64,000 nucleotides of DNA from positions 78,058,001 through 78,122,000 of the forward strand of contig NC_083243.1 in NCBI RefSeq assembly GCF_032191835.1. The letters are read 5' to 3'. The position numbers and the translations under genes were made by a program. The notes beneath the pieces are model-generated. The model was not told where the DNA came from and did no database searches. It worked only from the letters and a program-made list of their open reading frames with translations. Positions 1,909 to 64,000 of the stretch are shown here, one piece after another (the stretch's first letter is position 1; every line of letters begins with the position of its first letter). The DNA comes from Heteronotia binoei (Eukaryota).

Positions 1909-2058
<150 letters not shown>

Positions 2059-2374
2059 TAAAGCTATTAAAATATTAAGATAACTGCTTCTTGAAAATAG
2101 TGCTCCATGAACTTTTTCAAGTAAGATTGTACTTGAAAATATTTAGAAACGGAAGGACTTTTTAACATTTTCCTCAAAAGTATTATAGCAATTCAAGAGG
2201 TAGGAAAACAAAGCAAGGAAGTGGCAGAGCATGCTTTTGTTGGGTCTACTGCAGAGTATAATGGTGTACTTCTAATGGCTCAATGATCAGCTCTCAAGTC
2301 AAAAGATTCCCGTGACTGCACCTAGATGCTGTGTCACACCTTGTTTAAATAAACAGTTGCCTTTGTTGGCCTAG

Positions 2375-2638
<264 letters not shown>

Positions 2639-3446
2639 TAGATGTGTATATGCAAAACTTATATCACAGATTGATTCAAAGTGCATGTATTAGGCAGAAT
2701 CTGTTTTGAGACCACAAATTCTTTCAAGGGTAAGTTCAGTAGAAGAGAGGAGGATCCTGGGTCTTTTGAAAAGGTGGTTGCCTAGCTGGTTCTGTTTGTG
2801 TTATATTTCATAGCAGGAACCTATTCAAAAATATCTACTGAGTAAAGGAGCACACAAATAGTTTTGCATAGAGATCCATATTTAGATATTGAATAATGTA
2901 TAGCTTTGGATTGATATCTTTGATTAATACAGGGTCCTTGGGCTTTTGCAGCCCAACACTTGCAAAGTAAATCTTTGCTTATCCTCGTTTGAATTTACAA
3001 TGCTGCTTGCCACAATAGTAAATTTTCTTCTGGTCCCTAATAGGACATTTCCTTCTGGTGGTGTGTGAAAGAAGCCATTTTAAGACCTTTGCTAAAGAAA
3101 TTAGTTTGGCAAAATAAAATCTTGCCAGTTACACACCCTGAGCTTTATGGAAGGTGTAGGATACAAATATTTTAGTAAGTAAATATGATCAAAAAGACCT
3201 GTTGCATGGTGTTATTAATCTGCCTTCTAAGAGCCTTTCTCCATCTAAACTCTGTTCATTATATATTTTTGCTTGGAACTTGTTGAGTTTGCTTTTCCTG
3301 AAGTAATCATGCAGCAAAAGCCATTGTGGAGAAATAAACCCATAGGACCTTGAGATTCCCATGAACTGAAATTCAGGCACTTTTAATATATATCTGTTGT
3401 AGATATTATTTGTGAAGTGAGTTTGAAAATCATTATTTCTTATTAA

Positions 3447-3560
<114 letters not shown>

Positions 3561-4284
3561 TGAAATAAAACATTAAACAGAAAATACTCCTGCTCAGTGG
3601 GGCATAATTCCCATGATACAAGAGAACTATAGTTGGGTGGATCCTTTGACACTGAGGACTTGGCTATAGGTTCACAATAGACTTGAGTCTGTGAATCCCT
3701 TTTACTGCTGAACAGAGCTGCAAAGACAAGAAAGTGCAATTTGCAGCAAAGAATTAGTAGGTGGGGAAAGGATGCTTATCCTTTTCTGTATCTGCCACTT
3801 TTGTCTCTAATCCATTTCCTCCAGCCACTGTCACCATAATGAGGCAAATGTCTTAAGAATCTTGGCTGGTGGAGTAGCAGATGGTGGGGAGGGTGCTCTG
3901 GAATGTTTATTTAGCATACATCTCCTCCCCGCCCCCGCTGCTTCTCCAGTGCAAAAATATAGTTTCCCCTGCTTCTTTATAGCTCTAGGCTGTAGAGGAG
4001 GGCTCTCTAGCTGATCTTAAGTCATGGTGAAATCAAAGTTTCTGAGTTCTGGTAACCCTATGAGTTAATGACTTCCAAAATGTCTTACTGTAAACAGCCT
4101 TGCTCAGGTCTTGCTGTGGCTTTCTTGACTGAATCAGTCCATCTCCTGTTGGGTCCTCCTCTTTTCCTGCTGCCTTCAACTCTTCCTAGCATTCTTGTCT
4201 TTTCCAGTGAGTGTGGTCTTCTCATAAATGTGACCAAAGTACAATATCCACAGTTCGATTATTTTAGCTTCTAGAGAGAGTACA

Positions 4285-5980
4285 GGCTTGATTTGATCTA
4301 GAACCCACTTATTTGTCTTTTGGGCCAGTCTACATTATCTGTAAAACTCCTCAAAGACCACATGTCGAATGAATCAACTTTCTTCCTGTCAGCTTTATTC
4401 ATTATCCAGCTTTCACACCCATATGTAGCTTGCAAAACAGAGCTATTCTGCCAGGCTTTGCAGCTGAAGCACTGGACATCACCTTCTATTAGGTGTGTCC
4501 CCCGTGTCCCCCCCCCCAATTCTAGTGATCTTGGGATCTGATGGACTTGAACATATGAAGCTGCCTTTTACTGAATCAGACACTTGGTCCATCAAAGTCA
4601 GTATTGTCTTCTCAGACTGGCAATGGCTCTCCAGGGTCTCAAGCTGAGGTTTTTCACACCTGTTTGCCTGGACCCTTTTTTGGAGATGCCGGGGATTGAA
4701 CCTGGGACCTTCTGCTTCCCAAGCAGATGCTCTACCACTGAGCCACCGTCCCTCCCCTAATTTTCTGATGGAACCCATCCTGTGTCTGCTTTGCAGGAAG
4801 GGCAGGATATAAGTCAAACAAAATAAATAAATAATGGGGAATACTATGGCATGAATTAACTTTATCTTGATCACCTACACACATCTCTACACTTAAGGAT
4901 CTTTTCTAGCTCCTTCCCAGTCTCAGTCTTTCTGTTTTCTTGGTTGCAGCCTTCCTTTGGGCTGATGATGGAGCCAAGGAATAGAAAATCTTGTACAATT
5001 TCAGTTTCTTCACTGTCATCCTTAAAGTTGTCTAACTTCCTTGTCATGACTTTTGCATTTTTGATGTTCAGTTGTAATCCTGCTTTGGCACTTTCTGCAT
5101 TAACATTCTTCAGGAGATGTTTCAGGTCTTCACTGTTTCCTCCCAGTAATGTGCTGGCACATGAATATCTCGAATTATTAATGTTCCTTCCACCAGTTTT
5201 CACAATACCTTCACCTAAATCTGTCAGCTCTCCCCAAGACTTGTGCTGCAAATAGATTTAAGATATAGGGAGATAAAATGCATCCTTGGCTAACTCCTTT
5301 GCCAATTGGAATGTTTTGGTGTTTTTCTTCAGTATTCTAATTTTCAGCCTTAACACATCATGATCTGTACCACAATCAGTTCATGGTCCTCTTTTAGCAG
5401 AGACAATAGAGCTTCTCCAACTTCTGCTTCTGATTATGTAATCTGTTGAGTTTCTGTACTGGCTATCCAGTAATGTCCACATATACAATCGTCTGATCAG
5501 TCACCTGAAATGTGTTTGCGATGAACAACTAGTTGTCTTCACAGAATCCTATGAGTTGTTCTCCTGCTTTGTTGTGTGCTCCTAACTCAAATTTTCCAAC
5601 TGTATTTAATTCTACTTTATTCCCTGCCTTTGTGTTCCAGTCACCTATGACTAACAGCACATTTTGTTTAGGTGTGTGATCAGTTTCTTCCTGGAGACAT
5701 GCATAAAAGCGTTCAACTTCTTCAGCATCTGTAGTTGGGGCATAGACTTGACTGATGGATATATTTATAGGCTTTCCATGAAGTCTAATATTATTCAGTC
5801 AGACTTTGCATTATAGCTACTGACTGCCTGCGCTACATCTCACCTTGCTATTAGAGCAATTCCATTTCTTCTTTGTTCTTCATTTCTAGAGTAAAACACT
5901 TCATAATTTTCTGACTGAAAATATCCTAATGTAGTCTACTTTAGTTCACTCCCAAGATTACAATGTTTAAACATTCCATT
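4285..5980 (-). mobile_element. RTE-BovB-like LINE, internally deleted and interrupted, in RAD51 intron
   Basis: Minus strand: endonuclease motif IQVYAPTTDAEE (~5720-5750), RT-like IKT GGRNINN.RY (ORF 4871-5251), LIHAIVFPI (~4835-4860) resuming as YGCESW..KADRKK.DSF (4340-4430) after a nested SINE. Confidence 0.8.
4549..4759 (-). mobile_element. tRNA-derived SINE with CR1-like 8-nt tail
   Basis: Reverse strand: A box TGGCTCAGTGG, B box GGTTCAATCC, tail gcagcttcatatgttc. Near-identical copy at 10178-10392. Confidence 0.9.
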
Positions 5981-6071
5981 TATTATTTTACAATTTCTAG
6001 ATTATCAGTGTATCTTTTCAGAGAATCAAAGCACTTTTGTGACAATCTGTTGTTTTCGCCCCATTTCTTAG

Positions 6072-6242
<171 letters not shown>

Positions 6243-6864
6243 TGATAAGACTTGCTTAAGTAGCTTGCATGTTATTTAAAGTGTTTTACTGTACCTTTTA
6301 GTCAACGTAAAAGTAAGAGTAGAACAGAAGTGTACAAGATGTGTATTCATCTAATGTTCAGTATATACATAACTTGTGTTCTGCAAGCATAGAAAATGTG
6401 TTCCTGGCATCAGATCCCCTCTTTTGCAAAGACCGATTTAGGAGGCAGTGGAATTCCCACTGGAATAGACTTTCTCTATGCAATAATGCAGGCCTGTATT
6501 ATAAGCTAACCAGTGTCAATATTTCTGGGGGTAGATAGACAAAACTTTTGATTTCAGGCTATAATCAGGGCAAATCAGACACAAATGCACCAAGTACAGC
6601 TTTCTTAATAGAGTGTATTATTTTGACAGACCGTTTTCCCTCTTTTTATAGGAGAGGGATATAAATATCCGCTTACTTTTAAAAAAGATATTAAGCAGGT
6701 TTGACTATGTGCACCAAACTTTGCTTTCTAGGGCACATATAACCATTCTAACAATTTTTATATGCCCTTGTTCATTTCAAATTCATTTCATGTATTTACT
6801 GATTGATTAAAAATACTAGCCACTTTTCTACATTACAGGAACTCAAAGTGGTGTGTGAGGTAAA

Positions 6865-7410
6865 TAATATTATGTAAATAATAGCAAAACACAATAAATA
6901 CCCCAAACCAGTAATTTAAAATCAATAATTTAAAACTGCTGGTAGGCAGAACAAACTAATTGAGTGCTTTCGTGAATAAACCCATCTTCTGCTGCCTCCT
7001 AAAGGTCGAGTGAAAGGGCCAGGCACACCTCCCTGGGGAGCTTGTTCCATAATCATAGGGCTGCCACTGAAAAGTCCCTCTCTTGGTGTACCTACTGGAT
7101 AAGCTTATTTGATTAATAGTCAAGAGGGCCTCTCTCTGTTACCTTAATTCCCAGGCAGGAACATATGGGAGACCATTCTGCAGATACCCCGCTTGCAAAT
7201 CTTGTAGGGCTTTATAGGTCAAAACCAACACTTTGAATTGGGTTTGGGAATGGATAGGCCCAGTGTAGTTGCTGTAGTATTGGGGTCCCATGCTCCTGAT
7301 AGCTGGCCCTGACGAGCAGTCTAGTTGCAACTTCTGAACTCCCTTTGAGGTAGCCCCAATTGGAGTGCATTGCAATATTCCATTCTAGATGTAACTGAGG
7401 CATGGATCAC
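6865..7410 (-). mobile_element. L2 LINE 3' fragment in RAD51 intron
   Basis: Minus ORFs ILQQLHW.. and QFKVLVLTYKAL match the L2 ORF2 C-terminus seen intact at 21950-22020. Confidence 0.8.
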
Positions 7411-8020
7411 TATGTGATGATAATAAACAGAAGTAAATGCTCTGTTTGCTGATAATTTATAACTAAAGAAATGTCAGATTTTTTTCCAGTACCATACTCT
7501 GATATTTTTTAAAAAGTAATGAATTCCTAATGAGTTGAGATTCTGATGGCTGTTAATTTATTTAAAGTTTTTTTCTGAGATCCTATTAAGCCCTTTAAAA
7601 ATGAATACAGTTCAGAAAACTAGGACACCCATGATATAGATTCTTTGTGTATATCTTTCACAAAGATTATGTGAAAGGATTAAAGAGGATTATATATCAC
7701 TTTTACTACCCAAAATGCAATCTCAGCTCTTCCTTTTTTTGAAAAACAGATTAACAAAAAAGGAGAGTGAGTTTGTGTGGATTTTTGGAAACACAAAGAC
7801 CAACCTATAACACTGTTGAATGCAGCTTCCATTCCAATTTATCAAATCAACAGTAACAAGGTCTCTTTGATGCAGAGGGAGCAGCACACCAAAAATTGCT
7901 AGAGGGAGGGAGGGATGAGGCATACAATATGAAATAGTCTGGAACAGTCAGGCAGGGCATCAGACTTAACTAGATGCTCCCCAAAGACCGACTTGCCTTT
8001 TGTTTGATTTGCTCGCCTAG

Positions 8021-8134
8021 GTATGGCTTATCCGGCAGCGATGTGCTCGATAATGTGGCATATGCTCGAGGTTTTAATACAGACCATCAGACGCAGCTCT
8101 TATACCAAGCATCTGCTATGATGACAGAATCAAG
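8021..8134 (+). CDS. RAD51: RAD51 coding exon 6, (R)[37 protein letters not shown]
   Basis: ctAG acceptor, GTAACA donor at 8135; 114 nt. Confidence 0.99.
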
Positions 8135-10177
8135 GTAACAAGTGTAGCATGCTCAGAGAAGGTTGCCACTATCTTATAGGTTAATTGGTTCATCAATTGC
8201 AACATTTTATATAATTTCTCTGAAGATGGCAGGACAATGGCCTAATAAAGAGTCCCTGGCTTTTTTTTTTACCAGAATAATATAATTGTCCTGTGAAATA
8301 TGCCTAATCCTCGCTGCTGCCAGTTTTCCCAGATTGCAGTAGTGTTCTGTTACCATAAAATAAATTCTTCCTAACATTTCAGTTAAGTGCACCTTGGTAA
8401 GAAAAAGATGGTAGTTTTAGACTTGATGCCTCTCTTCAAAGAGATGTGTCCGAAATATGTGGTGGACAAATAAAAGACAATGGGTTGGATCCAGCCAGAT
8501 TTGTCAGTCAGTCTCACCAAATCCCCCTCACTACAGCCCTCATCCCACAAACCTTTTGATCATGCAGGTCCCAAGATTCTTAGCAGAGCTTTTTTGGATG
8601 TCAAAGGGGACCCCTTCCTTCCTTTTTTATCATTTAAAATGCCATTTGGATCTCACAAAACTGTTTTGTAACTGTTAAATGTAAATGAGATTGGAAGCCA
8701 TGCATGTTTATCTAAGATCTTGTCGTAAAAGACACATTTAGAACCCTATTCTACATGGAGGATATTTTATGTGCCACAAACTCTGATCCAGCCCTAGGAT
8801 GATCTTCAGTGGGGAGGGCGAGATATAAATCGAATAAATAAATTAACATTTGAAAGAGTGCTCAGGCATAGGTGGACCACCACACTAGAAGAACCCCTCT
8901 TACCACTGAGGTAATGTCCCATGTGAGCGAAGTGTTTCAGGGTAACCTGATTTATGCTCACTTAAAGGAAGGAGGTAATGCAAATGAATACTGAGCAATT
9001 ATATGGTTATGTGGAGCATCTATCTCGCAAACTGTGTGTGTGGAGGCGCATACATTCTACTGCGCAAAGTCCATTTCCAACCTACAAATGTATGAACCAG
9101 GCCTAGACTAACCAGTTTCATATTCATGCTTTATTCAGAATAATAGCCACCATTCTGCCCTACATTATACCCAGGTAGACAGAAATATGTAGGTTGCACA
9201 CTGGAATTGATTGATGATGTGCATGCCCTTTTCTGGTACAATGCAAGAGTCTTTCCAGTCTCACAAGAATACTGTATCCAAGCAGTCTAGTGTTAAGTAA
9301 AAAAGGCCTACAGACAGGCAACAATTTGAAGAATAACAGGCAAAATGAATGATCTCAGAAAATATCTTGGTGGGAATAGAACATTTCAGGGAACATTTTC
9401 AGATAAGAAAATAAACACCAAAATAGCATGCTAAGTTAGCCAGAATTCTGACAATAACAATACTATCTGGGTTAGAGTAAGATACTAATTGTGTGGAAGG
9501 TCACCTGGCACTTTGCCAGTAGACAGCATTCTTTTCCAGAGCAAAATATATGCTTCACTCACAGTATTTAACAAGCTGAGTTTGAAACATACATTCTCAC
9601 AACCTTTCCACAGCTGTATTTTTTTAAAAAAAATATTGATTGATATGAAGAAAAATACAGTTTTCAGGTCTGATACTATGTACTAACTGGAGTTTTGAAC
9701 CAATCACAATCTTACTACTTTAAATTTTTGATGAGGAGGGATGATAGGCAGTCTGGGTTACTTTACTGAGGAGCATCTGATAGTAGAATTGAGACAGTAC
9801 AAAAAGGAAATTATAATTATGTAAGTTTTTTTGATGTAAACCACCCTAAGCCCTGTTCCATGGGGAAGGGCAGCCTAAAGCTTGAATTTAATAAGTAAAT
9901 AAATAAATAGAAACCTACCAAGCTTTCAGTCAGTGAAACCCTCTACAGGACTTAAGGTGGTTTACATAAAAAAAGCTTTACATAATTATAATTTAAAATT
10001 AAAATTATCATAATACAGCATAAATACCAATAAGATGATGATGGAACTGCCAAGGTGTGCCATAGCCTCGAAGGGGGGGCAGGGGAAGCAGGAGTGCCAG
10101 CCAAATGGAAGAACATTGCTATCCTCAACAAACACCTTGTGGAACATCTCTTCCTTGCATGCCCTGCAGAACTTCAT

Positions 10178-10392
10178 TAACATATGAACATATGAAGCTG
10201 CCTTATACTGAATCAGACCCTCAGTCCATCAAAGTCAGGATTGTCTTCTCAGACTGGCAGCGGCTCTCCAGGGTCTCAGGCGGAGGTTTTTCACACCTTT
10301 TTGCCTGGACCCTTTTTTGGAGATGCCGGGGATTGAACCTGGGACCTTCTGCTTACCGAGCAGATGCTCTACCACTGAGCCACCGTCCCTCT
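10178..10392 (-). mobile_element. tRNA-derived SINE, same family as 4549-4759
   Basis: Same A/B boxes and body; tail repeat aacatatg x2. Confidence 0.9.
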
Positions 10393-10867
10393 AGTCCCAC
10401 AGGGCTTGAGTATCACTCAGCAGAGAGTTCCAGAAAGTTGGGGACAGGGCAGAGAATGTCCTGGCCCTGATCAAAGACAGCCACATACCTTATCAGCCGA
10501 CCATAATAAAAGAGTGCAACAGTGAATAAAGAAACAGTAAAGGTTGGTACAAATAAATAAACAGCCCTAAGGCATCTAACTAGTCGTTCCCTGTTACTAA
10601 ATATCAAAATTCACCACCCCCTTTGAGTGAGGGATCCCTTCCTCCAGCTACAGCCTTCTCCACACTGCAGCCCTTCCAAAGAGAACAACTTTCCTTTCTA
10701 GCTAGGCCTTTTATTGCCTTCCTCCAAGGTCCCACCCCTTTGGGTGAGTTTTCCCTTCAAAAACTCTGTCACCCAATCAGAGGGACAAAAGGGATCCTGG
10801 AAGATGTAGGCCCACTAGCCACTCCTACACAGGCTTCTCCGGAGCTTGTAGGCCTCACTAGGCCTAG

Positions 10868-11074
<207 letters not shown>

Positions 11075-11266
11075 TAAGTGGCCTACACCTTATTATTTTA
11101 TTTTGTTCCATCTGCAGTATTCTCCGGGTAGTCAAGGGATGAACAGGGGTACTTTATTCAGAATAAATGGGATGAATGTAATGTCTGAGTAGACGATGAC
11201 AGACCACCTGGGGCGCTTTCCATTTCTAGCAAAGAAGCTGCAGTTAATTTTATGCCTCTCTTGTGA

Positions 11267-11392
<126 letters not shown>

Positions 11393-11524
11393 TAAGACAG
11401 AAGAATGCTAGTTTTAATTGATGTGGCTTTTCTTAGGTTCTGGTAGGTTATCTGATGGAGTGGGGAAAAGGATAATTAATGTCCAAATTGCTGTAGAGCC
11501 AGATTATTATTTTTTAATCTGTAG

Positions 11525-11689
<165 letters not shown>

Positions 11690-41191: not shown

Positions 41192-41753
41192 CAAAAAAAT
41201 AGCCAAAGTAAACAATTATAAGGAGTAGGATCTGCAATATATTAAAAACTGCAATACATTAAAAAGGCAGTAATTCGTGTTTTAATATTTGAAGATTAAA
41301 TAATGGCCAAGAGCAAAACAAAACCGCAGAAAAGCAGAAGTAGGGTCTTCAGCAAGCTGTGGTTAAAGGTGAAGCAGAAAGTAGGGAAATGACCCAAAAA
41401 GGTCAGAAAAATGAGATCATGTAGAAAGGTGATTGGTCAAAGGATTGTGCAAGAGGGGTATATAAGACCAGTGTGCCTCTGTGATTTGGCTCAGACCCTG
41501 GGTCTGAAGCCCATGTACAGGGGCCCGTGTGCACGTTAAATAAAGCTTGGCTGTTTTCCTGATCTCGCCTCAGACCTCGTTTGTAAGTATGATTTAATAT
41601 TAATTGGGCAACACAGGACTTTTCCTGCTACAGAATCAAACATTATTTAATCTTCAAATATTAAAACACGAATTACTGCCTTTTTAATGTATTGCATTTT
41701 TTAATATATTGCAGATCCTGCTCCTTATAATTGTTTACTTTGGCTATTTTTTT
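41192..41753. repeat. 113-bp inverted repeat (41192-41305 vs 41641-41753) around an LTR-like core
   Basis: Arms differ at 2 positions; the spacer contains TATA (gtatataag ~41458), AATAAA (~41539) and ends ...gggcaaca. Confidence 0.9.
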
Positions 41754-41777
41754 GAGAAGGAGAGGAGGAGGAGATAT

Positions 41778-44410: not shown

Positions 44411-45393
44411 CAGGGCTTTTTTTGAGCCGGAACGCACCAGAACGCTGTTCTGGCAGGCACGAGGAGTGTTCCGGCTGCCCATGCCAGTGTTCCACCTCAG
44501 CACAGCCAGCTTGCTGGCTGGGCTGAGCTGACTGAGCCAGCTTCCTGACTGACGCTTGTGTGGCATCAGTCAGGAAGCTGTGTGACTGACGCTTGTGTGA
44601 GCTGACTGAGCCAGCTTCCTGGCTGACGCTTGTGTGGCGTCCTCCCAGCTCCCCAATGTCTGGCCAGGGTCAGGGGGCCCAACCGTGCTTGCACGGCGTT
44701 TCCCTGCTCCCCAACGGCCGGCCGGGATCAGGGGGGATGAGCTGTGCATCTGTGGTGTTTTCCCACCTCCCCGACCTCCAGCCAGGGTCAGGGGGTCGAG
44801 CCGCACATTTGTGGCATTTTCCCACCTCCCCAACCTCCGGCCAGGGTCGGGGGCCAAGCCATGCTTGTGCGGCTTCCTCCCAGCTCCCTGACTTCTGGTC
44901 GGGGTAAGGGGGCCCAACTGCATTTACGCAGCATCCTCCTGGCTCCCCGACAGCTGGCCAGGATCGGGGGGCAAGCTGCGCATCCATGGCGTCTTCCCGC
45001 CTCCCCAACCTCTGGCTGGGGTCGGGGGGGGGGGCTGAGATGCGCATCTGCGGTGTTTTCTTGCTCCCTGATGACTGGTCAGGGTCAGGGGGTCCGAGCC
45101 GTGCATTTGCAGCGTTTTCCCACTCCCAGAAGGCTGGCCGGGGTTGGGGGGCCGAGCTGCACATCCGCAGCATTTTCCCGGCTCCCTGCTGGCTGGCTGG
45201 GCTGAGGGGGGTGAGCCATGCTGGGCTCTGCCCTCCCAGGGCCTGGCTGGCTGTGAGGCTTTCAGAGCCCAGCTGCAGCAGCGGGATTGTTTTTGGCCAG
45301 GGTTCCCCTCTGTGGAAGAGTCAGCATTGCATTTCAGGTAAGTTTGTTGACGCTCCTCCACCCCATCTGCATTAAATCCTTACTTGCTCCAAT
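44411..45393. mobile_element. GC-rich hAT-type element carrying a diverged ~59-60-bp minisatellite (about 9 copies, 44640-45190); runs into the gap
   Basis: Starts cagggcttttttttgagccggaacgc; unit consensus ctccccgacctccggccagggtcaggggg.cgagccgc.catttg.ggc.ttttccca. Confidence 0.65.
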
Positions 45394-45551
45394 NNNNNNN
45401 NNNNNNNNNNNNNNNNNNNNNNNNNNNNNNNNNNNNNNNNNNNNNNNNNNNNNNNNNNNNNNNNNNNNNNNNNNNNNNNNNNNNNNNNNNNNNNNNNNNN
45501 NNNNNNNNNNNNNNNNNNNNNNNNNNNNNNNNNNNNNNNNNNNNNNNNNNN
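45394..45551. other. Assembly gap (158 N)
   Basis: Run of N. Confidence 1.
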
Positions 45552-45659: not shown

Positions 45660-45897
45660 CAGTGTTTCCTCTAAGCTGAGTTAGTGTGAGCTAGCTCACT
45701 GATTTTTAGCCTCCAGTTCACAGATTTTTGTCTTAGCTGAGGAAGGATGACCCCAGAGAACAATAATTTATGCAGTAGCTCACAACTTTAATGCCAATAG
45801 ATCACAACTTTAATGCCAATAGCTCACAACTTCAATGCCAGTAGCTCACAAAGTAGAATTTTTGCTCCCAAGATTCTGCAGCTTAGAGGGAACATTG
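45660..45897. mobile_element. hAT MITE (CAGTGTTCCCTCTAAG TIR) with an internal 22-bp tandem repeat
   Basis: TIRs cagtgtttcctctaag / cttagagggaacattg; TSD-like tcacagcc / ccacagcc; tagctcacaactttaatgccaa x~3.5. An inverted copy with one unit lies at 49634-49820. Confidence 0.82.
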
Positions 45898-46124
45898 CCA
45901 CAGCCAGTGCCTCCCAAGTGATTACTAAGATGTCAGCCCAGAAGCTCTCTCACATGTGCATATATGAATACTGTCAAAAAAAGAAACGTGGCCACAACTG
46001 AATTGCCAAGGTGCCAGCATCCACTGCAAGTAAGGAACAGTGCAATCCTAAACAGATCTATTCAGAATTTTATTGAACTCTACTCTGTTGTGATTATTTC
46101 TAGGAAGGTTAGATTCATGTCCAG

Positions 46125-49000
46125 TAGAAACTAGAGACATCTTGGGAATCAGTGAACTAAAATGGATGGGAATGGGTGAATTTAACTCAGAGAATTACTA
46201 CATCTATTATTGTGGGCAAGAGTCATGTAGAAGAAATGGTGTGGCCTTTATAGTTAACAAGAGAGTGAGGAAGGCAGTAATGGGATACAATCTCAAAAAT
46301 GACAGAATGATCTTGGTCTGTATCCAAGGCAAACCATTCAATATCACAGTAATCCAAGTCTATGCCCCTACCACTGATGCAGAAGAGGCTGAAGTGGACC
46401 AGTTCTATGAAGATCTACAACACCTTCTAGAAATAACACACACAAAAAAAGATGTCCCCCTCATCATAGGGCAGGGGTGGCCAATGGTAGCTCTCCAGAT
46501 GTTTTTTTGCCTACAACTCCCATCAGCCTCAGCCATTGGCCATGCTGGCTGGGGCTGATGGGAGTTGTAGGCAAAAAACATCTGGAGAGCTACCGTTGGC
46601 CACCCCTGTCATAGGGGACTGGAATGCCAAAGTAGGAAGTCAAAAGGTAACCGGAACAACTGACAAGTTTGGCCTTGGAGAACAAAATGAAGTCGGGCAA
46701 AGGCTAATAGAGCTTTGTCAAGAGAACAAGCTGGTCATAGTGAACACCCTCTTCCAACAACCTCTTCCTACACATGGACATCACCTGATGGGCAACACAG
46801 AAATCAGATTAATTATATACTCTGCAGTCAAAGATGGAGAAGCTCCTTATGGTCAGCAAAAACAAGACCTGGAGCTGACTGAGGCTCAGATCATGAGTTA
46901 CTCATTGCAAAATTCAGGCTTAAACTGAAGAAAACTGGGGAAGCCATTAGGCCATTCAGGTTTAACCTTGATCACATCCCTTATGAATATACAGTGGAGG
47001 TGAAGAATAGGTTTAAGGAACTAGAGTTGATAGACAGAGTGCCTGAAGAACTATGGATGGAGGTTCGTGACATTGTATAGAAGGCAGCAATCAGCACCAT
47101 CCCAAAGAAAAAGAAATGCAAGAAAGCAAAGTGTCTGTCTGATGAGGCTTTACAAATAGTCAAGGAAAGAAGAAAAGCGAAAGGCAAAGGTGAAAAGGAA
47201 AAATTCACCCAACTGAATGCAGATTTTCAGAGAACAGCAAGGAGAGATAAGGAGGCCTTCCTGAAGGAACAATGAAAAGCAATAGAGGAAAATAACAGAA
47301 TGGGAAGGACAAGAGATCTCTTCAAGAAAACTGGAGATATCAAGGGAACGTTTCGTGCAAAGATGGACATGATAAAGGACAAAAACAGTAGGGACCTAAC
47401 AGAAGCAGACAAGATCAGGAAGAGGTGGCAAGAATACACAGAAGAATTATACAAGAAGGATCTCAATGTCCTTGACAACCATGACAGTGAAATCGCTGAC
47501 CTTGAGCCAGACATCCTGGAGTGTGAAGTCAAATGGACCTTAGAAAGCATTAGAGAGCGGAGATTATGGTATCCCAGTTGAGCTATTCAGAGTCCTAAAA
47601 GATGATGCTGTTAAAGTGATGCACATATTATGTCAACAGATTTGGAAAACGCAACAATGGCCACAGGATTGGAAAAGATCAGTTTATATTCCAATCCCAA
47701 AGAAGGGTAATGACAAAGAATGTTCAAACTATCGCACCATTGCACTCATTTCACATGCCAGCATGGTCATGTTAAAGATCCTACAAGCTAGGCTTCAGCA
47801 GTATGTAGATTGGGAACTACCAGAAGTTCAAGCTGGGTTTCGGAGAGGTAGAGGAATTAGAGATCAAATTGCCAACATTCAATGGATTATGGAGAAAGCA
47901 CGGGAGTATCAGAAAAACGTCTTTTTCTTTTTCATTGACTACACTAAACCCTTTGATTGTGTGGATCACAACAAACTGTGGCAAGTCCTTAAAGAGACGG
48001 GAGTACCAAACCACCTCACATGTCTCCTGAGAAACCTGTATAAGGGTCAAAAAACAACTGCCAGAACAGGATATGGAACAACTGATTGGTTTAGAATAGG
48101 AAAGGGAGTTTGACAAGGATGTATATTGTCACCCTGCTTATTTAATTTATATGCAGAGTACATCATGCGGAATGCTGGCCTGGATGAAGCAGAAGCCGGA
48201 ATTAAGATTGCTGGGAAAAACATCAACACCTCAGATATGCAGATGACACCACTCTAATGGCAGAAAGTGAGGAGGACCTAAAGAACCTCTTGTTGAGGGT
48301 AAAAGAGGAGAGCACAAAAGGAGGCTTGAAACTCAACATAAAAAAAAACTAAGATCATGGCATCTGGCCCCATCACACCTTTGCAAATAGAAGGGGAAGA
48401 CACGGAAGTAGTGACAGACTTCACATTTCTGGGGTCCAAGATCACTGCAGATGGTGACTGTAGCCATGAAATTAAAAGACGTTTGCTCCTTGGGAGGACA
48501 GCTATGGTGAACCTGGGCAGTATAATAAGAAGTGGAGACATCACCCTGCCCGCAAAAGTCCGTATAGTCAAAGCGATGGTATTCCCAGTAGTAATGTATG
48601 GCTGTGAGAGCTGGACCATAAGGAAGGCTGAGCGCAGAAGAACAGATGCTTTCAAGCTGTGATGCTGGAGAAGAATCTTGAGAGTCCAAATCAGTCAGTC
48701 CGAAGGGAAATCAACCCAGACTGTTCCCTGGAAGGTCAGATGCTGAAGCTGAAGCTCAAATACTTTGGCCATCAAATGAGAAGGGAGCACTCACTGGAGA
48801 AGATCCTGATGCTGGGAAAAACAGAAGGCAAAAGAAGAAGGGGACGGCAAAAGATGAGATGGCTGGACAGCGTTAGTGATGTAACAAACACGAATTTGAG
48901 CAAACTTTGGAGGATGGTGGAAGATAAGAGGGCCTGGCGTGACTTTGTCCATGGGGTCACAAAGTGTCGGACTCAACTGTGCAACTGAACAACAAGAAGA
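46125..49000 (+). mobile_element. RTE-BovB-like LINE covering endonuclease, RT and 3' end, with frameshifts and stops
   Basis: LGISELKW, IQVYAPTTDAEE, IGDWNAKVG, NYRTIALISHAS, FIDY.K.FDCVDH, YADDTTL, YGCESWT; tail caactgaacaacaagaag. Confidence 0.96.
46472..46608. mobile_element. 137-bp palindromic hAT-Charlie-like MITE nested in the RTE endonuclease
   Basis: TIR caggggtggcca / tggccacccctg; perfect 8-bp TSD tcataggg. Confidence 0.95.
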
Positions 49001-49585: not shown

Positions 49586-49840
49586 CTCCTGTATGTTAGC
49601 CCTGGTTAGTATTCAGATGGGAGGACCTCCCAAGCAATACTCCCTCTAAGCTGTGTAGTCCTGTGAGCTAGAATTCAATTTTGTGAGCAATTGGCATTAA
49701 AGTTGTGGGCTACTGCATAAATTAATGTGCCCTGGGGCCATTTTTCCAAGCTAAGACAAAAATGTGTGAGCTGGAAGCTAAAAAACTGTGAGCTAGCTCA
49801 CACTAACTCATCTTAGAGGTGGATGTGATTATATGGTCTA

Positions 49841-50324: not shown

Positions 50325-50483
50325 TATTTCTGGTGATGTCAGAAGCATGGCCTTGCATGCAAATGATGGTGATGTCAGAGGTGTGGCATAGTATGCAAAT
50401 AATGATGATGCCAGAGGTGTGGCCTCGCATACTAATGAGTTCCTGCTGTGCTTTTTTTTTTTTTTTTTATAAAAAAAGCCCTG
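50325..50483. mobile_element. hAT MITE end with three 36-39-bp tandem units, two containing ATGCAAAT
   Basis: ggtgatgtcaga..tggc...atgcaaat units; terminus aaaaaaagccctg. Confidence 0.65.
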
Positions 50484-53753: not shown

Positions 53754-53995
53754 GTTTTAAAAGACTGCAGTAAAACCAGAAAGTTCTCAGGAAGCCTTTG
53801 AAAGTTTTATCAATGACAAGCAATGTCAACAAAGCACAGCCAAAAAAACCTGGTCAGTTAATACCCATTCAAGTTGCTACACTTGCTAGGAACAAGTGCA
53901 ACTAAACAAAGGTTATGCACACTCAGGGAGACTTTCTTCCAGGCCAAGGTGCTCATTATTGGACTACATAAGCCAGAAGGCTCAATGCAGACTGA

Positions 53996-54232
53996 TACCG
54001 TTTTCGCACACAGCTTACCATGGGGTCACGTTCTTGTTCTCTCCGCAGCATCTGTCAGATTCCCCACTATCTGCGCTGGAGTTACAGGAAGTGCCGCGGC
54101 TTTTGCGTAGCAAATGTAACCTGGGTTTTAGCGGTACTTCCTGTAATTTCGGCGCAGATAGTGGGAAATCCAACGGACTCTGCGGAGAGAACAGGAACGT
54201 GACCCCGTGGTAAGCTGTGTGCGAAAACGGTC
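53996..54232. mobile_element. 237-bp fold-back MITE (PIF/Harbinger-like, TIR .ACCGTTTTCGCAC)
   Basis: Long imperfect inverted repeat; TIR related to GGGCGTTTTCGCAC; flanks tga / aga. Confidence 0.8.
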
Positions 54233-56109
54233 AGAGTCAAAAGACATCTTGCCCCCCGCCCTCACAATAAAGAAGTTAAACTACTGATAATTTGCAAGCA
54301 ACAACAGAAGCCATAATCCATCAGGCACCATCTTTGCTTAATAGCTGAGTGGGCTTCAATTATGAAGACTCTAACACCTCTTACTTCTACATCTTTCTTC
54401 CTAGGGTCTGACTATACCTGACATCTGGTACAAGTTGGGTTGGGGGTCCCCTGACCTGACTAAGTCACATGTACATTTGTGTGGGGTCACCTTAAAAACT
54501 GCTCTGTCCATTGCTGTGGCTCAGAGTGCAGGGGGGAGGGGAAGAGGGGCTTCTGCCTTCATTCCTATGCCATTTTCCTAGAGGAAATGATGGGGTGTGT
54601 GTGTGTGTCTGTTTAACCCTTCCTTGAGCTTCACAAGTCCTAATTCACTTGAACTCCCAACCCAATTTGTGTCACATATCCTGTATAGTTGAAGCCTTAC
54701 CTTTAGGGAGAAGCAACCAAATCTCTGCCCCTAGCAGGGGCACTTCAGTGCTTGAGGATGAGTTTGCTGCATCTGTTCTTTGCTTGGATTATATTATGTA
54801 AACTATTTGAATGCTTATTTTTCAGTATTTTGCTACCAAGATTTAGAGCTTGGATCCAAAATACTGGATGTGGCTTTTCCCTCCTATGCAGCAGTCTTCT
54901 AGGCCAAACCACATGAAAATACTAAACAGAAACTGGTTTACACTAGGTGGAGACACATGTCTAATTAATTAAATACCTCAGCATTTATCTGTGGTTGGAT
55001 GTTCATATTTTGTGAGATTACTGATGTTGCTTTCTGAAATAGAAGATCTGATTAGAGTGAAACATTTTGTTCCTTTCTTTCCCTCAAGATATACCCACAC
55101 ACATGATTTTTGAGGTGAACATGTTCAACAAATATACCATGTTCAGTTATCAGATAAGAGTCAATCACTATGTCTGTTTGGTTCTGTACTGAATGGCTCA
55201 AATAGCTGCCAAACAGGTTTGCACTGATTCTTTACAAGTGTGCGTGCACAAAAAGCCTGCTGATCCAAATGGACTGGCAACCATTAATACTACTAAAGCC
55301 TGCTTAGATCAACACTGAATGGTAGGATTTTTTTTAAAAAAACACCAGTAATAAATGGCTGATTTATATGATTGGTGACTGATTTAACAAGGGTGAGGTA
55401 GGAGTGGTGTTGAATTCTATCATGCTGGATGAGAATTTGCACACTCAAAAAGCCAATTGTTCTGTACTGTTCTGCTGTGAGGAAGGAACAGTAGACCAGC
55501 TGAACACCACAAATGGGTTGAGACAGTCTATCTAAAAATCAGCTCCCTATTCATGACTGGTGAACAGGATGTGGACCCAAATGGCAGATGGTGAAGCATC
55601 CCTGTACACAGCTCTATGTCTACCAGTCCAAAATTACCAATTTGCTATCAATTTCCTGTCCTGTTCAATAATATTTTTGATTATCAATTGATTCATTTCT
55701 CAGAGCTAGGCTAACAACCTGTACACAGAAACACCATTTTATTTTTCTTCATCACAATGTGTTTTCTATTTAAAAGGCTAATGTTCCTCAATTTATTTGA
55801 CACATCTGCAATTTCACTACAGAAACATAAATTCTATGAGCTATTCAGGAATTTCTGAACTATGACAAATTTAACTGTAATTGCTGTGCCACTGTCATAG
55901 AGAACAGAGAAAAAAATGACACACTGGAGGAATTTTGAAACTTAATTTCTGATGAGGTATGATTCAAGTAGTCTGCCTGGCTTTGCATCATAGTTTAGTG
56001 ATTAGACTGTTGGACTAGGATATGGGAGGTTTGAATTCCCACTCTGCCAAGGAAGCTCACTGGTTAAACTTCAGCCAGTTTCTCTATCTCTGCCTATCCT
56101 ACTTCATGG

Positions 56110-56694: not shown

Positions 56695-56930
56695 TTATTC
56701 TTATATCCCGCCCTCCCCCGGATTAAGGCTAAGTGGACTTCTTTGGGGCCAGGGATTATCAGCAGATGTTGATCCATGGAGTGTAAGGCTCTCTGGGGGG
56801 TATATGGGAAGAGGTTGTCTCGCAGATATATGGTTTGCAAAAAGCCCGAAAAGCAACTGAGCTGTTTTTGCAGCTTTCATGGGAAACCCCCACTTTCTGC
56901 TCCATTCACAAACTGCACAAATATCTCTAA

Positions 56931-57216
56931 GGGCGTTTTCGCACTGACCTTAATCAGCAGCGACGCCCCTCTTCACCGCGCAGGATCGGCGCGGATTTCG
57001 CACTAATTGCTGCGGAGCACCCGGAAGAGCTGGAAAGTCCCGTGGCTTTTGCGGCACAAATGGAAACTGGTTTTTGGCGGTTTCCGTTTGCGCCGCAAAA
57101 ACTGCGGGACTTTCCGGCTCTTCCGGGTGCTCCGCGGCAATTAGTGCGAAATCCGTGCCGATCCTGCGCGGTGAAGAGGGGCGTCGCTGCTGATTAAGGT
57201 CAGTGCGAAAATGCCC
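56931..57216. mobile_element. 286-bp fold-back PIF/Harbinger-like MITE
   Basis: TIR gggcgttttcgcact / agtgcgaaaatgccc; TAA on both flanks (Harbinger-type 3-bp TSD). Confidence 0.92.
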
Positions 57217-58077
57217 TAAACGTTTGTGGAAATTCATGACAGTGAACCCATCACAAACTTCTGTTCATGAACCACAAACAGGGCAAAGTTCATCATGATT
57301 TTTGTTTCATGGTTTGGTTTGTGCCCATATGTGTTCCAGGAAATGATTTTAAAGGCCTTCTCCCAAGGACATCTCTGCTGAATGCCAGTCCTCCACTGGG
57401 CAAGAGAGAAAAAATGGTATTTTCCCACTGGGATAGAAAGGCCTGCGATCATCTTCCTTCTGGTCTTTGTAATTCCAATGGAGAAATTGCTTTTTCTACT
57501 TCTTGCCCAGAGGAGCCCAGGATTCAGTAGAGAGATGCCATGAGAGAAGGCCTTCAAAGTCATGGCTTGGAATATTCTTTTCCTCCACCACCTCCTTTTT
57601 AAAAATTATATTCTGACATGTAACCTGAGGACGAGTTCTGCTAATAAACATAAGCAATTTTGTTTGGTCAACATAGTTTAACTCATACAATTTTTTCCTC
57701 AAAAAGGCAATTTCCATTACATTTGTGTAGCAACTTTTTAAAATACCCTTCTGAGCAACTGATTATTCAGGTTTAAGGATTAGGTCATCATAGCCAAGAA
57801 TGAAAGTAACAAATGCAATGAAAATATTCTAATGAACTATCATTAGCAGTAAAATATTTATTACACAGAGAATGTAGTTTGCCTATTCAAACTCTTTCTC
57901 AATTCAGATGTGTTGGGACAGCTCCTCAACTGGTTTCAGATTCCTTGTACTACCCACAATGCAGGGCACTTTTGTAAAGTCAATTGCCCTAAAAATATGG
58001 TTTTGGGGAATTTAGAGCGGTTGGCAATCAGCCTTTTAGTGAGATCTAAAAACCTGTTTATATAGAAGGCGTCTGCT

Positions 58078-62218: not shown

Positions 62219-62504
62219 AAGAAGAAGAAGATAGAAGATATTGGATTTATATCCAGCCCTCCACTCCGTAGAGTCTCAGAGCGGCTCACAATCTCCTTTA
62301 CCTTCCTCCCCCACAACAGACACCCTGTGAGGTGGGTGGGGCTGGAGAGGGCTCTCACAGCAGCTGCCCTTTCAAGGACAACCTCTGCCAGAGCTATGAC
62401 TGACCCAAGGCCATGCTAGCAGGTGCAAGTGGAGGAGTGGGGAATCAAACCCGGGTCTCCCAGATAAGAGTCTGCACACTTAACCACTACACCAAACTGG
62501 CTCT
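62219..62504 (-). mobile_element. Young full-length Squam3-like SINE with (CTT)n tail
   Basis: Reverse strand agagccagtttggtgtagtggttaag (A box), gggtttgattcc (B box), core, tail aatatcttctatcttcttcttc. Confidence 0.93.
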
Positions 62505-62834
62505 TCACTGAATGAAGTTTAAAAATATATGTTAAGAAGGGACAAAGTGCAATTGTTATTGTTGGGAAGGAATTTGAGAATATGGAATAAAAATAAAAAA
62601 TTAGTTTGTGTCTGAAAACACCTTTGTGACTCTCAACAAAAAAAGCATACGCTAGATGAGAAATAATAAAAGCATAAATTGTTAACATATTGTGACATAT
62701 TAGAATTTTCTCAAGGGGAATGTAAAATGAAATTAAGAGATTTGATAACAGAAGGATATATTTGCCAATGGCTTTCTTATATACAATTAGCAGAAAGATA
62801 TAAAATAAATAAAAGATATTATGAACAATCCAAG

Positions 62835-64000
62835 TAGGGTGGCCAGACCGTCCCGGTCTCCCGGGACATTCCCGGATCTGGCCACCCAATCCCGGATCCC
62901 GGGCTGCCTATACCGGGACCATTAAAGGTCCCGGTTTAGGCAGCCCCGGAGCCGGTGGGCCGCGGGCGCGGGCGGGGAAGGCGGGGAGTGAGCGTCCCTG
63001 CGCCTGCGCAGGGCCCCTGCGCACGCGCAGGGACACTCCCACCCTCACTCCCCGCCTTCCCCGCCCGCGCGCGGGGCCCGGCGGCAGTGGTGGAGGCCTC
63101 TCCGTGGCCTCCGCTGGTCGCTGGAAGCCCTCCAGAGACTCTGGAGGGCCTCCAGCGACCAGTGGAGGCCGCGGAGAGGCCGCGGGGCACCCGGCGCTGG
63201 TCCCGGAAGGCCTTCCAGAGCCTCTGGAAGGCCTTCGGGGACCAGCGCCGGCCAGCGAAGGCTTCCCCGCGGCCTCCGCTGGTCCCTGGAGGCCCTCCAG
63301 AGTCTCTGGAGGGCCTCCAGGGACCAGCGGAGGCCGCGGGGAAGCCGCGGGGCACCCGGCGCTGGTCCCGGAAGGCCTTCCAGAGCCTCTGGAAGGTCTT
63401 CGGGGACCAGCGCCGGCCAGCGAAGGCTTCCCCGCGGCCTCCGCTGGTCCCTGGAGGCCCTCCAGAGTCTCTGGAGGGCCTCCAGGGACCAGCGGAGGCC
63501 GCGGGGAAGCCGCGGGGCACCCGGCGCTGGTCCCGGAAGGCCTTCCAGAGGCTCTGGAAGGCCTTCCGGGACCAGCGCCGGCCAGCGAAGGCTTCCCCGC
63601 GGCCTCCGCTGGTCCCTGGAGGCCCTCCAGAGTCTCTGGAGGGCCTCCAGGGACCAGCGGAGGCCGCGGGGAAGCCGCGGGGCACCCGGCGCTGGTCCCG
63701 GAAGGCCTTCCAGAGGCTCTGGAAGGCCTTCCGGGACCAGCGCCGGCCAGCGAAGGCTTCCCCGCGGCCTCCGCTGGTCCCTGGAGGCCCTCCAGAGTCT
63801 CTGGAGGGCCTCCAGGGACCAGCGGAGGCCGCGGGGAAGCCGCGGGGCACCCGGCGCTGGTCCCGGAAGGCCTTCCAGAGCCTCTGGAAGGCCTTCGGGG
63901 ACCAGCGCCGGCCAGCGAAGGCTTCCCCGCGGCCTCCGCTGGTCCCTGGAGGCCCTCCAGAGTCTCTGGAGGGCCTCCAGGGACCAGCGGAGGCCGCGGG
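62835..64000. mobile_element. Left end of a GC-rich hAT (Blackjack-like) element; right end lies beyond the window
   Basis: Abrupt AT-to-GC switch at tagggtggccagaccgtcccgg, with subterminal gtcccg/cccgg repeats typical of TAGGGTG(A/G)CCA hAT ends. Confidence 0.7.
63095..64000. repeat. 165-bp GC-rich tandem array (about 5.5 copies visible), each unit two palindromes
   Basis: Period 165 confirmed at 63203/63368/63533/63698/63863; palindrome A has 30-bp arms and palindrome B 43-bp arms, each with a 1-nt loop. Confidence 0.98.

What the first reader, a model, noticed from the sequence alone, without database searches (positions are those of the whole stretch)
63095..64000. 165-bp tandem array built from two homologous near-perfect palindromes per unit
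Seen directly: each unit is palindrome A (e.g. 63521-63581, 30-bp arms ccggcgctggtcccggaaggccttccagag, 1-nt loop), an 8-nt linker, palindrome B (63590-63676, 43-bp arms, loop t) and a 9-nt linker, totalling 165 nt. Both palindromes centre on CCAGAG-N-CTCTGG and share gctggtccc..g.aggcc.tccagag, so A and B look like paralogues of one ancestral ~80-bp hairpin. Arm A also contains the self-palindrome ggaaggccttcc. Copies 3 and 4 share variants (loop g, ttccggg) that differ from copies 1, 2 and 5. CpG is not depleted, unlike the flanks. Established: long perfect palindromes can extrude cruciforms and are recombination-prone. Inference: a young or actively homogenised array carried by a hAT element, which would yield a chain of dsRNA hairpins if transcribed.
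Basis: partly seen in the sequence, partly recalled or inferred. Interest (0 to 1): 0.72.

Follow-up and report, generated by a model that had tools for sequence, protein, structure and literature searches.

The report
Hairpin repeat array inside gecko transposon
The 165-base repeat made of two hairpin-forming mirror sequences is real, but it looks like non-coding filler inside a cut-and-paste (hAT-type) transposon that this scan has already met elsewhere in the same gecko genome, and nothing here shows a function.

Summary
There are 5.5 copies of a 165-bp unit at 63094-64000, 97% alike. Each unit is a 61-nt palindrome A, an 8-nt linker, an 87-nt palindrome B and a 9-nt linker. GC is 75%, and CpG is not depleted (o/e 0.64, against 0.12-0.22 in the flank).

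The array starts 260 bp inside a GC-rich block with a sharp left edge at 62835. That edge has a hAT-type terminus (TAGGG...), eight TCCCGG subterminal motifs and three more hairpins. The right end lies beyond the window, so the right inverted repeat and the 8-bp target duplication could not be checked.

All six reading frames are open, but no protein or RNA family matches. I read it as non-coding.

Earlier notes of this scan report the same 165-base two-hairpin unit on other chromosomes of this gecko genome, inside 1-2 kb non-coding hAT elements.

One addition: the two variants shared by copies 3 and 4 are a centre base C>G and a repaired arm mismatch 16 nt away. A single replication template switch predicts exactly this pair, followed by a one-unit duplication. 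The same known process explains why the palindrome arms change together without selection.

Verdict: a tidy new member of a known kind, of low interest.

The parts
62827..62834 (.). 8 bases left of the element (AATCCAAG). This is the candidate target-site copy, and its partner would lie beyond the window.
   Evidence: Read directly. It cannot be tested without the right end.
62835..62849 (+). Left terminus TAGGGTGGCCAGACC, a candidate hAT terminal inverted repeat that fits YARNG.
   Evidence: GC jumps from 0.28-0.41 to 0.68-0.77 here.
62835..62889 (.). Terminal hairpin: the terminus pairs with an inverted copy of itself at 62875-62889 (2 mismatches).
   Evidence: The DNA fold is -22.8 kcal/mol, z -6.7.
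62851..62934 (.). Cluster of eight TCCCGG/CCGGGA hexamers, i.e. subterminal short repeats.
   Evidence: 8 observed in 62835-62960 against 0.17 expected (maximum 3 in 1000 shuffles).
62903..62944 (.). 42-nt hairpin with a 6-nt loop.
   Evidence: -20.2 kcal/mol, z -8.0.
62951..63085 (.). 135-nt compound palindrome: 45-nt arms 89% complementary, with a nested palindrome around 62996-63032.
   Evidence: pair I23; 19-nt period; -82.8 kcal/mol, z -15.
63095..64000 (.). Tandem array of 5.5 units of 165 bp, cut by the window end.
63095..63181 (.). Palindrome B, edge copy 1. It has 3 unpaired sites and centre A, and differs from the other B copies by 3 changes mirrored on both arms.
63191..63251 (.). 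Palindrome A, copy 1: centre C and a G/G mismatch 16 nt from the centre.
63260..63346 (.). Palindrome B, copy 2: perfect 43-nt arms, centre T.
63356..63416 (.). Palindrome A, copy 2: centre C and two mismatches.
63425..63511 (.). Palindrome B, copy 3: perfect.
63521..63581 (.). Palindrome A, copy 3: perfect, centre G (derived form).
63590..63676 (.). Palindrome B, copy 4: perfect.
63686..63746 (.). Palindrome A, copy 4: perfect, centre G. The whole unit is identical to copy 3.
63755..63841 (.). Palindrome B, copy 5: perfect.
63851..63911 (.). Palindrome A, copy 5: centre C and a G/G mismatch.
63920..64000 (.). Palindrome B, copy 6, truncated by the window end (37 of 43 arm pairs visible, all paired).

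Best explanation
The stretch from 62835 to at least 64000 is the left part of a non-coding, non-autonomous cut-and-paste DNA transposon of hAT type. It lies about 51 kb downstream of RAD51.

Its structure is a short terminus, then subterminal TCCCGG repeats that are probably transposase-binding sites, then a chain of GC-rich hairpins. Its interior is a minisatellite whose 165-bp unit is two diverged copies (A and B) of one ancestral palindrome of about 82 bp.

The array has no shown function. I read it as filler that travels with the element and changes by ordinary repeat dynamics:
- Unit-length duplication and loss by slippage or unequal exchange. Copies 3 and 4 are a fresh duplication, and the edge copy is decayed.
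- Replication template switching between palindrome arms. This makes the arms perfect again, copies a change from one arm to the other, and inverts the centre base.

High CpG reflects youth, lack of germline methylation or ongoing homogenisation.

Shown: the anatomy, the symmetry statistics, the absence of any coding or RNA-family signal, and the exact fit of the copy 3/4 variants to one template-switch event. Inferred: hAT membership, mobility, dispersal in the genome and lack of function.
For: The array and its palindromes are confirmed.

The left boundary is sharp. The terminus is TAGGG..., with an internal inverted copy. There are 8 TCCCGG/CCGGGA hexamers within 125 bp of the terminus, against 0.17 expected. 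YARNG termini and 8-bp duplications define lizard hAT families, and lizard non-autonomous hAT/hobo elements of 1.3-3.4 kb with unrelated interiors are described (PMC3014272).

There is no sign of coding. All six frames are open, as expected for stop-poor GC-rich symmetric DNA. A word search of one frame found no protein. Pfam gave only sub-threshold summed matches, with no single stretch passing. Rfam gave only sub-gathering hits to many unrelated hairpin models on both strands.

The arms co-vary. 8 of 37 pairs changed on both sides among A, B and the edge copy, and 88.6% of cells are paired against 31-49% when the partner is slid.

The template-switch fit is exact: left arm + complement of the centre base + reverse complement of the left arm, built from copies 1, 2 or 5, reproduces palindrome A of copies 3 and 4. 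Template switching is reported to homogenise inverted-repeat arms and invert the spacer (PMC8604942) and to create and maintain hairpins with apparent compensatory changes (PMC8794818).

Transposons carrying tandem repeats, including ones with a palindrome in each repeat, are a described kind (PMC3879986; PMC4079207; review PMC12628747).

Unverified leads: the scan's notes report the same 165-base two-hairpin unit inside 1-2 kb non-coding hAT elements on other pieces of this genome.
Against: Only the left end is visible, so the right inverted repeat and the 8-bp target-site duplication are untested. With one end, other superfamilies or a non-mobile origin cannot be formally excluded.

I could not show multicopy dispersal myself. 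The scan's sequence look-up was blank. Exact-pattern scans of metagenome and viral collections found nothing, as expected for gecko DNA.

The block also meets the sequence criteria of a CpG island, so a host promoter cannot be ruled out from composition alone.

The template-switch reading rests on two linked sites in one array.
Confidence: 0.8

Rival explanations
1. This is a local host feature, not a transposon: a CpG-island promoter or first exon region of a gene that starts beyond the window, holding a GC-rich variable-number tandem repeat.
For: GC is 75% and CpG o/e is 0.68 over 1166 bp, which meets the sequence criteria of a CpG island. The right side is unseen. I have no verified second copy.
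Against: The left edge is abrupt at a YARNG-type terminus with an inverted copy and eight clustered TCCCGG hexamers, which is transposon-end anatomy. No coding signal was found. The scan's notes report the same unit on other chromosomes inside hAT elements, though this is unverified.
Confidence: 0.08
2. The array is a functional hairpin-RNA locus, such as a cluster of microRNA-like or endo-siRNA precursors or a self-silencing trigger for the transposon family. On this reading, selection for pairing keeps the palindromes perfect.
For: Each unit folds into 30- and 43-bp perfect stems on either strand. 8 of 37 pairs changed on both arms. Transposon hairpins are a known source of small RNAs (general knowledge).
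Against: The Rfam hits are all far below gathering scores. They are spread over many unrelated microRNA models and are equal on both strands, which is what any perfect hairpin gives. A 1-nt loop and 30-43 perfectly paired GC-rich pairs are DNA-palindrome geometry, not microRNA-precursor geometry. The co-variation is explained by template switching without selection (PMC8604942, PMC8794818). No expression data could be obtained.
Confidence: 0.05
3. The copy number or the near-identity of the units is partly an assembly artefact, i.e. a collapsed or expanded array.
For: Perfect palindromes in tandem are hard for polymerases and assemblers. A preprint reports long-read bias against satellites rich in inverted repeats (10.64898/2026.07.13.738322, listed, abstract only). 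Copies 3 and 4 are identical.
Against: The array has an ordered internal pattern: a decayed edge copy, private variants in copy 2, and a shared pair in copies 3 and 4. That pattern is not what a collapse produces. There is no gap or N in or next to it. This rival concerns the copy count only, not the existence of the unit.
Confidence: 0.06
4. The array encodes a repetitive protein, since 165 bp is 55 codons and the frames are open.
For: All six frames are open for 317-392 codons. One ORF of 304 aa is listed on the minus strand.
Against: Openness in all six frames at once is a composition effect, not a coding signal. No homologous protein was found for the frame searched. Pfam matches are summed noise with no stretch passing alone. 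Only two of the six frames were covered by the protein word search, thanks to the strand symmetry.
Confidence: 0.01

Closest known systems
Non-autonomous hAT/hobo families of lizards (Anolis carolinensis hobo-N and orphan hAT-N families; Novick et al. 2010, PMC3014272)
   Same: A squamate host, and a terminus of the YARNG type starting TAGG. The elements are non-coding, 1-3 kb long, and their interior is unrelated to any transposase gene and differs between families.
   Different: The terminus here (TAGGGTGGCCA) matches the anole hobo terminus (TAGGCTTGMTC) at only 6 of 11 positions. That paper does not mention palindromes or tandem arrays at all. The right end and target duplication are unseen here.
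Tandem-repeat-containing MITEs (DTC84/pearl of bivalves, PMC3879986; Xenopus miDNA4 and Xstir, reviewed in PMC12628747)
   Same: A short non-coding DNA transposon with a central array of a few ~100-170 bp repeats and unique arms. Each repeat holds a palindrome, which has been proposed as a hotspot for copy-number change. Variants are ordered along the array.
   Different: Those elements belong to other superfamilies or are unclassified (AA or TA target sites). Their palindromes are short parts of the repeat. Here almost the whole unit (148 of 165 nt) is two long perfect palindromes.
Foldback transposons that seed satellites (Tetris of Drosophila virilis, PMC4079207)
   Same: The element is built almost entirely of repeats and hairpin-forming DNA. 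Internal tandem repeats can expand.
   Different: Foldback elements have long terminal inverted repeats made of direct tandem repeats in opposite orientation at the two ends. Here each unit is itself a palindrome, so orientation is undefined, and the terminus looks like a short hAT end.
Template-switch mutation at inverted repeats (quasipalindrome correction; PMC8604942, PMC8794818, PMC7954356)
   Same: The process makes the arms identical and inverts the spacer in one event. This gives clustered changes that look compensatory. The pair of variants in copies 3 and 4 fits this exactly.
   Different: It has been described mostly for short inverted repeats in genes, promoters and RNA hairpins. 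Here it acts on 61-87 nt palindromes inside a transposon minisatellite.

Membership tests
hAT superfamily, non-autonomous element | Terminal motif YARNG at the element end | tested here: met
   TAGGG at 62835-62839, exactly at the composition break. Criterion from PMC3014272.
hAT superfamily, non-autonomous element | Matching short terminal inverted repeat at the other end | not testable with these tools
   The right end lies beyond base 64000. The only inverted copy in the window is internal, at 62875-62889.
hAT superfamily, non-autonomous element | 8-bp target-site duplication | not testable with these tools
   The left flank is AATCCAAG, and the right flank is outside the window.
hAT superfamily, non-autonomous element | Short subterminal repeats near the end (transposase-binding type) | tested here: met
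   8 TCCCGG/CCGGGA hexamers in 62835-62960 against 0.17 expected. That they bind a transposase is inferred.
hAT superfamily, non-autonomous element | No transposase gene (non-autonomous) | tested here: inconclusive
   There is no protein family in the visible 1166 bp, but the rest of the element is unseen.
hAT superfamily, non-autonomous element | Several dispersed copies with different flanks | not testable with these tools
The scan's notes say yes, but this is unverified.
Tandem-repeat-containing MITE / satellite-carrying DNA transposon | Central tandem array flanked by non-repeated arms ending in inverted repeats | tested here: inconclusive
   The left arm (260 bp) plus the array are seen. 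The right arm is not seen.
Tandem-repeat-containing MITE / satellite-carrying DNA transposon | Copy number of the internal repeat varies between element copies | not tested
   No other copy was available to me.
Foldback elements | Long terminal inverted repeats composed of tandem subrepeats | tested here: inconclusive
   The array is strand-symmetric because each unit is a palindrome. There is a distinct short terminus and a non-repeated 260-bp arm. The right end is unseen.
Any Rfam RNA family (microRNA precursors in particular) | Score at or above the family's gathering threshold | tested here: not met
   The best hit is mir-1258 at 56.3 bits against a threshold of 74. Dozens of unrelated hairpin models hit equally on both strands.
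CpG island (sequence criteria: over 200 bp, GC over 50%, CpG o/e over 0.6; criteria recalled from general knowledge) | Composition thresholds | tested here: met
   1166 bp, GC 0.75, o/e 0.68. Whether it is unmethylated in vivo cannot be tested here.

The most novel reading that the evidence does not exclude
The palindromic array could be a working module that the transposon family spreads, rather than inert filler. It could be a portable, unmethylated CpG island whose A palindrome carries paired CCGGAAGG/CCTTCCGG (ETS-like) and TCCCGG sites, acting as a dispersed promoter or enhancer. It could be a decoy or booster array of transposase-binding sites. Or it could be a hairpin-RNA source that triggers silencing of the family. 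In any of these cases copy number and palindrome perfection would be under selection.
Probability: 0.06. Interest if true: 0.6.

Novelty: new member of a known kind. Interest (0 to 1): 0.2.

Why it matters
As it stands this is a clean example, not a discovery. It shows a vertebrate DNA transposon carrying a minisatellite made almost wholly of long perfect palindromes.

It also gives a readable case in which one template-switch event, followed by one unit duplication, accounts for the variant pattern. That is useful as a caution: arms that change together, and CpG richness, are not evidence of a selected RNA or DNA structure.

It could matter more under two conditions. One is that the family is active in the gecko, giving insertion polymorphism near genes such as RAD51. 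The other is that the arrays are fragile sites or unmethylated islands. Neither is shown here.

Tried and rejected
1. Sequencing runs and read laying, to get copy number, empty sites, array length variation and RNA. 

2. Extending past base 64000. No tool holds this genome, and the findings look-up accepts only 1-64000.

3. Finding other copies:
- By the scan's sequence index: blank.
- By exact patterns in metagenome and viral collections: 0 hits.
- By treating the open frame as a protein, to reach gene calls on other contigs: 82 word candidates, none scoring. I ran no further search on the remaining frames.

4. Coding reading: rejected.

5. Known RNA family: rejected.

6. A 55-bp self-contained mini-element at 62835-62889: rejected, because its flanks AATCCAAG and TCCCGGAT do not match.

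7. PIF/Harbinger reading of the terminus: unlikely, because the bases before GGGTGG are TAG, not TAA or TTA. A true Harbinger-like MITE with a TAA duplication elsewhere in the window shows the contrast.

8. A simple inversion of the whole A palindrome as the source of the copy 3/4 variants: rejected. It predicts a C/C mismatch at +/-16, whereas the left arm is unchanged and the pair is perfect.

9. The weak terminus-like match at 4046-4060 (3 mismatches) is chance. It lies just past a RAD51 exon, and 19 of 100 shuffles gave as many matches.

Full report
**What is there**

The last 906 bases of the window are a tandem array with a 165-bp period, 5.5 copies, 97% matches and no indels. Read in register, copies 3 and 4 are identical. 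Copies 2 and 5 differ from them at 3 and 2 sites. Edge copy 1 differs at 12 sites, and the partial sixth copy is identical over its 81 bases.

Each unit has four parts:
- palindrome A: 30-nt arms around one centre base;
- the linker CCAGCGAA;
- palindrome B: 43-nt arms around one centre base;
- the linker GCGGGGCAC.

The shared core of A and B occurs 22 times in the window, all in the array, with none expected by chance. A gapless 81-nt family with alternating 83/82-bp spacing shows that A and B are 67-69% alike. So the 165-bp unit is a dimer of one older ~82-bp palindrome.

As single strands the palindromes are extremely stable. A folds at -42.8 and B at -65 kcal/mol as DNA, with z-scores of -13 and -19. 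The whole array can also fold in many alternative long-range registers, because it is nearly its own reverse complement.

**Surroundings**

GC rises abruptly from about 0.3-0.4 to 0.68-0.77 at 62835. CpG o/e rises from 0.12 to 0.83 in 62835-63094 and 0.64 in the array.

The first bases of the GC-rich block are TAGGGTGGCCAGACC. This fits the YARNG terminal motif that, together with an 8-bp target duplication, defines lizard hAT families (PMC3014272).

Forty bases further in there is an inverted copy of the terminus with 2 mismatches. Between 62851 and 62934 lie eight TCCCGG/CCGGGA hexamers, against 0.17 expected. Two more hairpins follow before the array starts, at 62903-62944 and the 135-nt compound palindrome at 62951-63085. 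The same TCCCGG hexamer sits in the arms of palindrome A.

This is the anatomy of a DNA-transposon end: terminus, subterminal short repeats, then filler. Just upstream (about 62240-62510) is what looks like a tRNA-derived squamate SINE; this is my reading and was not tested.

The window also holds RAD51 exons on the + strand from 1912 to 11686. The element therefore lies about 51 kb downstream of RAD51. I did not identify any gene around it.

**What it is not**

All six reading frames are open through the array. That is what a stop-poor, strand-symmetric GC-rich sequence gives, and it is not a coding signal. A word search with one frame, which by symmetry also covers one frame of the other strand, found no protein. 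Pfam gave only summed sub-threshold matches with no single stretch passing.

Rfam gave 141 weak hits. All were far below gathering scores, spread over dozens of unrelated microRNA hairpin models, and equal on both strands. Any perfect hairpin behaves this way.

**How the array changes**

I aligned the eleven palindromes on their centres and counted pairs. Of 37 pairs, 21 never vary and 8 have changes on both arms. 88.6% of cells are paired, against 31-49% when the partner column is slid. So A, B and the old edge copy differ mostly by changes that are mirrored on both arms.

This need not mean selection for a structure. The pair of variants that marks copies 3 and 4 is informative:
- Copies 1, 2 and 5 have centre base C and a G/G mismatch 16 nt from the centre.
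- Copies 3 and 4 have centre base G and a perfect G-C pair there.
- The left arm is unchanged.

Suppose a nascent strand finishes the left arm, jumps to the other parental strand and copies back across the centre. It would then write the complement of the centre base and a perfect reverse complement of the left arm. That construction reproduces the copy 3/4 palindrome exactly from copies 1, 2 or 5.

Template switching between inverted-repeat arms is reported to do precisely this: it homogenises the arms and inverts the spacer (PMC8604942). It is also reported to create and maintain perfect hairpins with apparent compensatory changes (PMC8794818).

The B centre of the old edge copy is A where the others have T, again the complement. 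Two complement flips out of two centre changes is suggestive only.

After that event the unit was duplicated once, giving copies 3 and 4. The decayed edge copy and identical interior copies are the usual signature of unequal exchange or slippage in arrays. Two of the three unpaired sites in edge copy B1 are CpG-to-TpG changes, so ordinary CpG decay is visible where homogenisation does not reach.

**Is it a dispersed transposon?**

I could not show this myself. The window ends inside the array, so the right inverted repeat and the target duplication are out of reach. The other routes also failed:
- The scan's sequence index returned nothing.
- Exact-pattern scans of metagenome and viral collections found nothing.

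The scan's own earlier notes are leads, not evidence. They say that this genome is a gecko; one note names Heteronotia binoei. They also say the same 165-base two-hairpin unit was met on other pieces of the genome, each time inside a 1-2 kb non-coding hAT-type element (s1-340749, s1-318588, s1-330137, s1-345470). One of those notes also reports a centre base that alternates between units, which matches what I see here.

**Comparison with what is known**

Lizard non-autonomous hAT/hobo elements with interiors unrelated to the transposase are described (PMC3014272). That paper does not mention palindromes or tandem arrays. Its hobo terminus matches this one at only 6 of 11 positions.

Non-autonomous DNA transposons with a central array of tandem repeats are a described kind. 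Examples are DTC84/pearl in bivalves, which has a palindrome in each repeat proposed as a hotspot for copy-number change (PMC3879986); Xenopus miDNA4 and Xstir (review PMC12628747); and the foldback element Tetris (PMC4079207).

This one stands out because nearly the whole unit, 148 of 165 nt, is two long perfect palindromes. That is a difference of degree, not of kind.

**Verdict**

The best explanation is non-coding filler of a non-autonomous hAT-type transposon, shaped by slippage and template switching (confidence 0.8). It is a new member of a known kind, already met by this scan on other DNA of the same genome. Interest is low (0.2).

Noticed in passing
window 1912-11686 (+): RAD51 coding exons. 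Long exact matches to RAD51 peptide probes run from the N-terminal helix-hairpin-helix part to the C-terminal end, e.g. an exon at 3460-3539 followed by a GT splice donor.
   Followed up: partly
window 56929-57218: A 290-bp foldback MITE. It has 138-nt arms 93% complementary with 12 nt between them. Its termini are GGGCGTTTTCGCACTGACC and its near-copy, and it is flanked by TAA on both sides. This looks PIF/Harbinger-like (3-bp TWA duplication, from general knowledge).
   Followed up: partly
window 44411-45260, next to the N run 45394-45551: Another GC-rich block starting CAGGGCTTTTTTTGAGC. It holds a 37-bp array (3 copies) and a degenerate 59-bp array (about 10 copies, 68-72% alike). It may be another repeat-filled transposon.
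   Followed up: no
window 45668-45898 and 49634-49819: Inverted repeats of 71-82 nt (79-92% complementary), about 4 kb apart. They enclose LINE-like endonuclease and reverse-transcriptase ORF fragments (46142-48988). This may be an element with inverted ends that was interrupted by a LINE, or a chance pairing of two repeat copies.
   Followed up: no
window 41192-41305 and 41641-41754: AT-rich inverted repeat with 114-nt arms, 98% complementary, 335 bp apart. This looks like a young element with long inverted ends.
   Followed up: no
window 53990-54238: Palindrome with 108-nt arms, 86% complementary and 33 nt between the arms.
   Followed up: no
window 62240-62510 (-): SINE-like repeat with a tRNA-like head about 330 bp upstream of the element. 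My recollection is that it resembles squamate tRNA-derived SINEs. Not tested.
   Followed up: no
window 50331-50438: Three copies of a 36-bp unit (79% alike) containing ATGCAAAT.
   Followed up: no
window 63531-63570 and the same place in each unit: The arms of palindrome A hold CCGGAAGG / CCTTCCGG (ETS-core-like, from memory) overlapping the TCCCGG hexamer of the subterminal region. The right-arm site is intact only in copies 3 and 4. The scan's notes mention ETS-like palindromes in other hAT elements of this genome.
   Followed up: no
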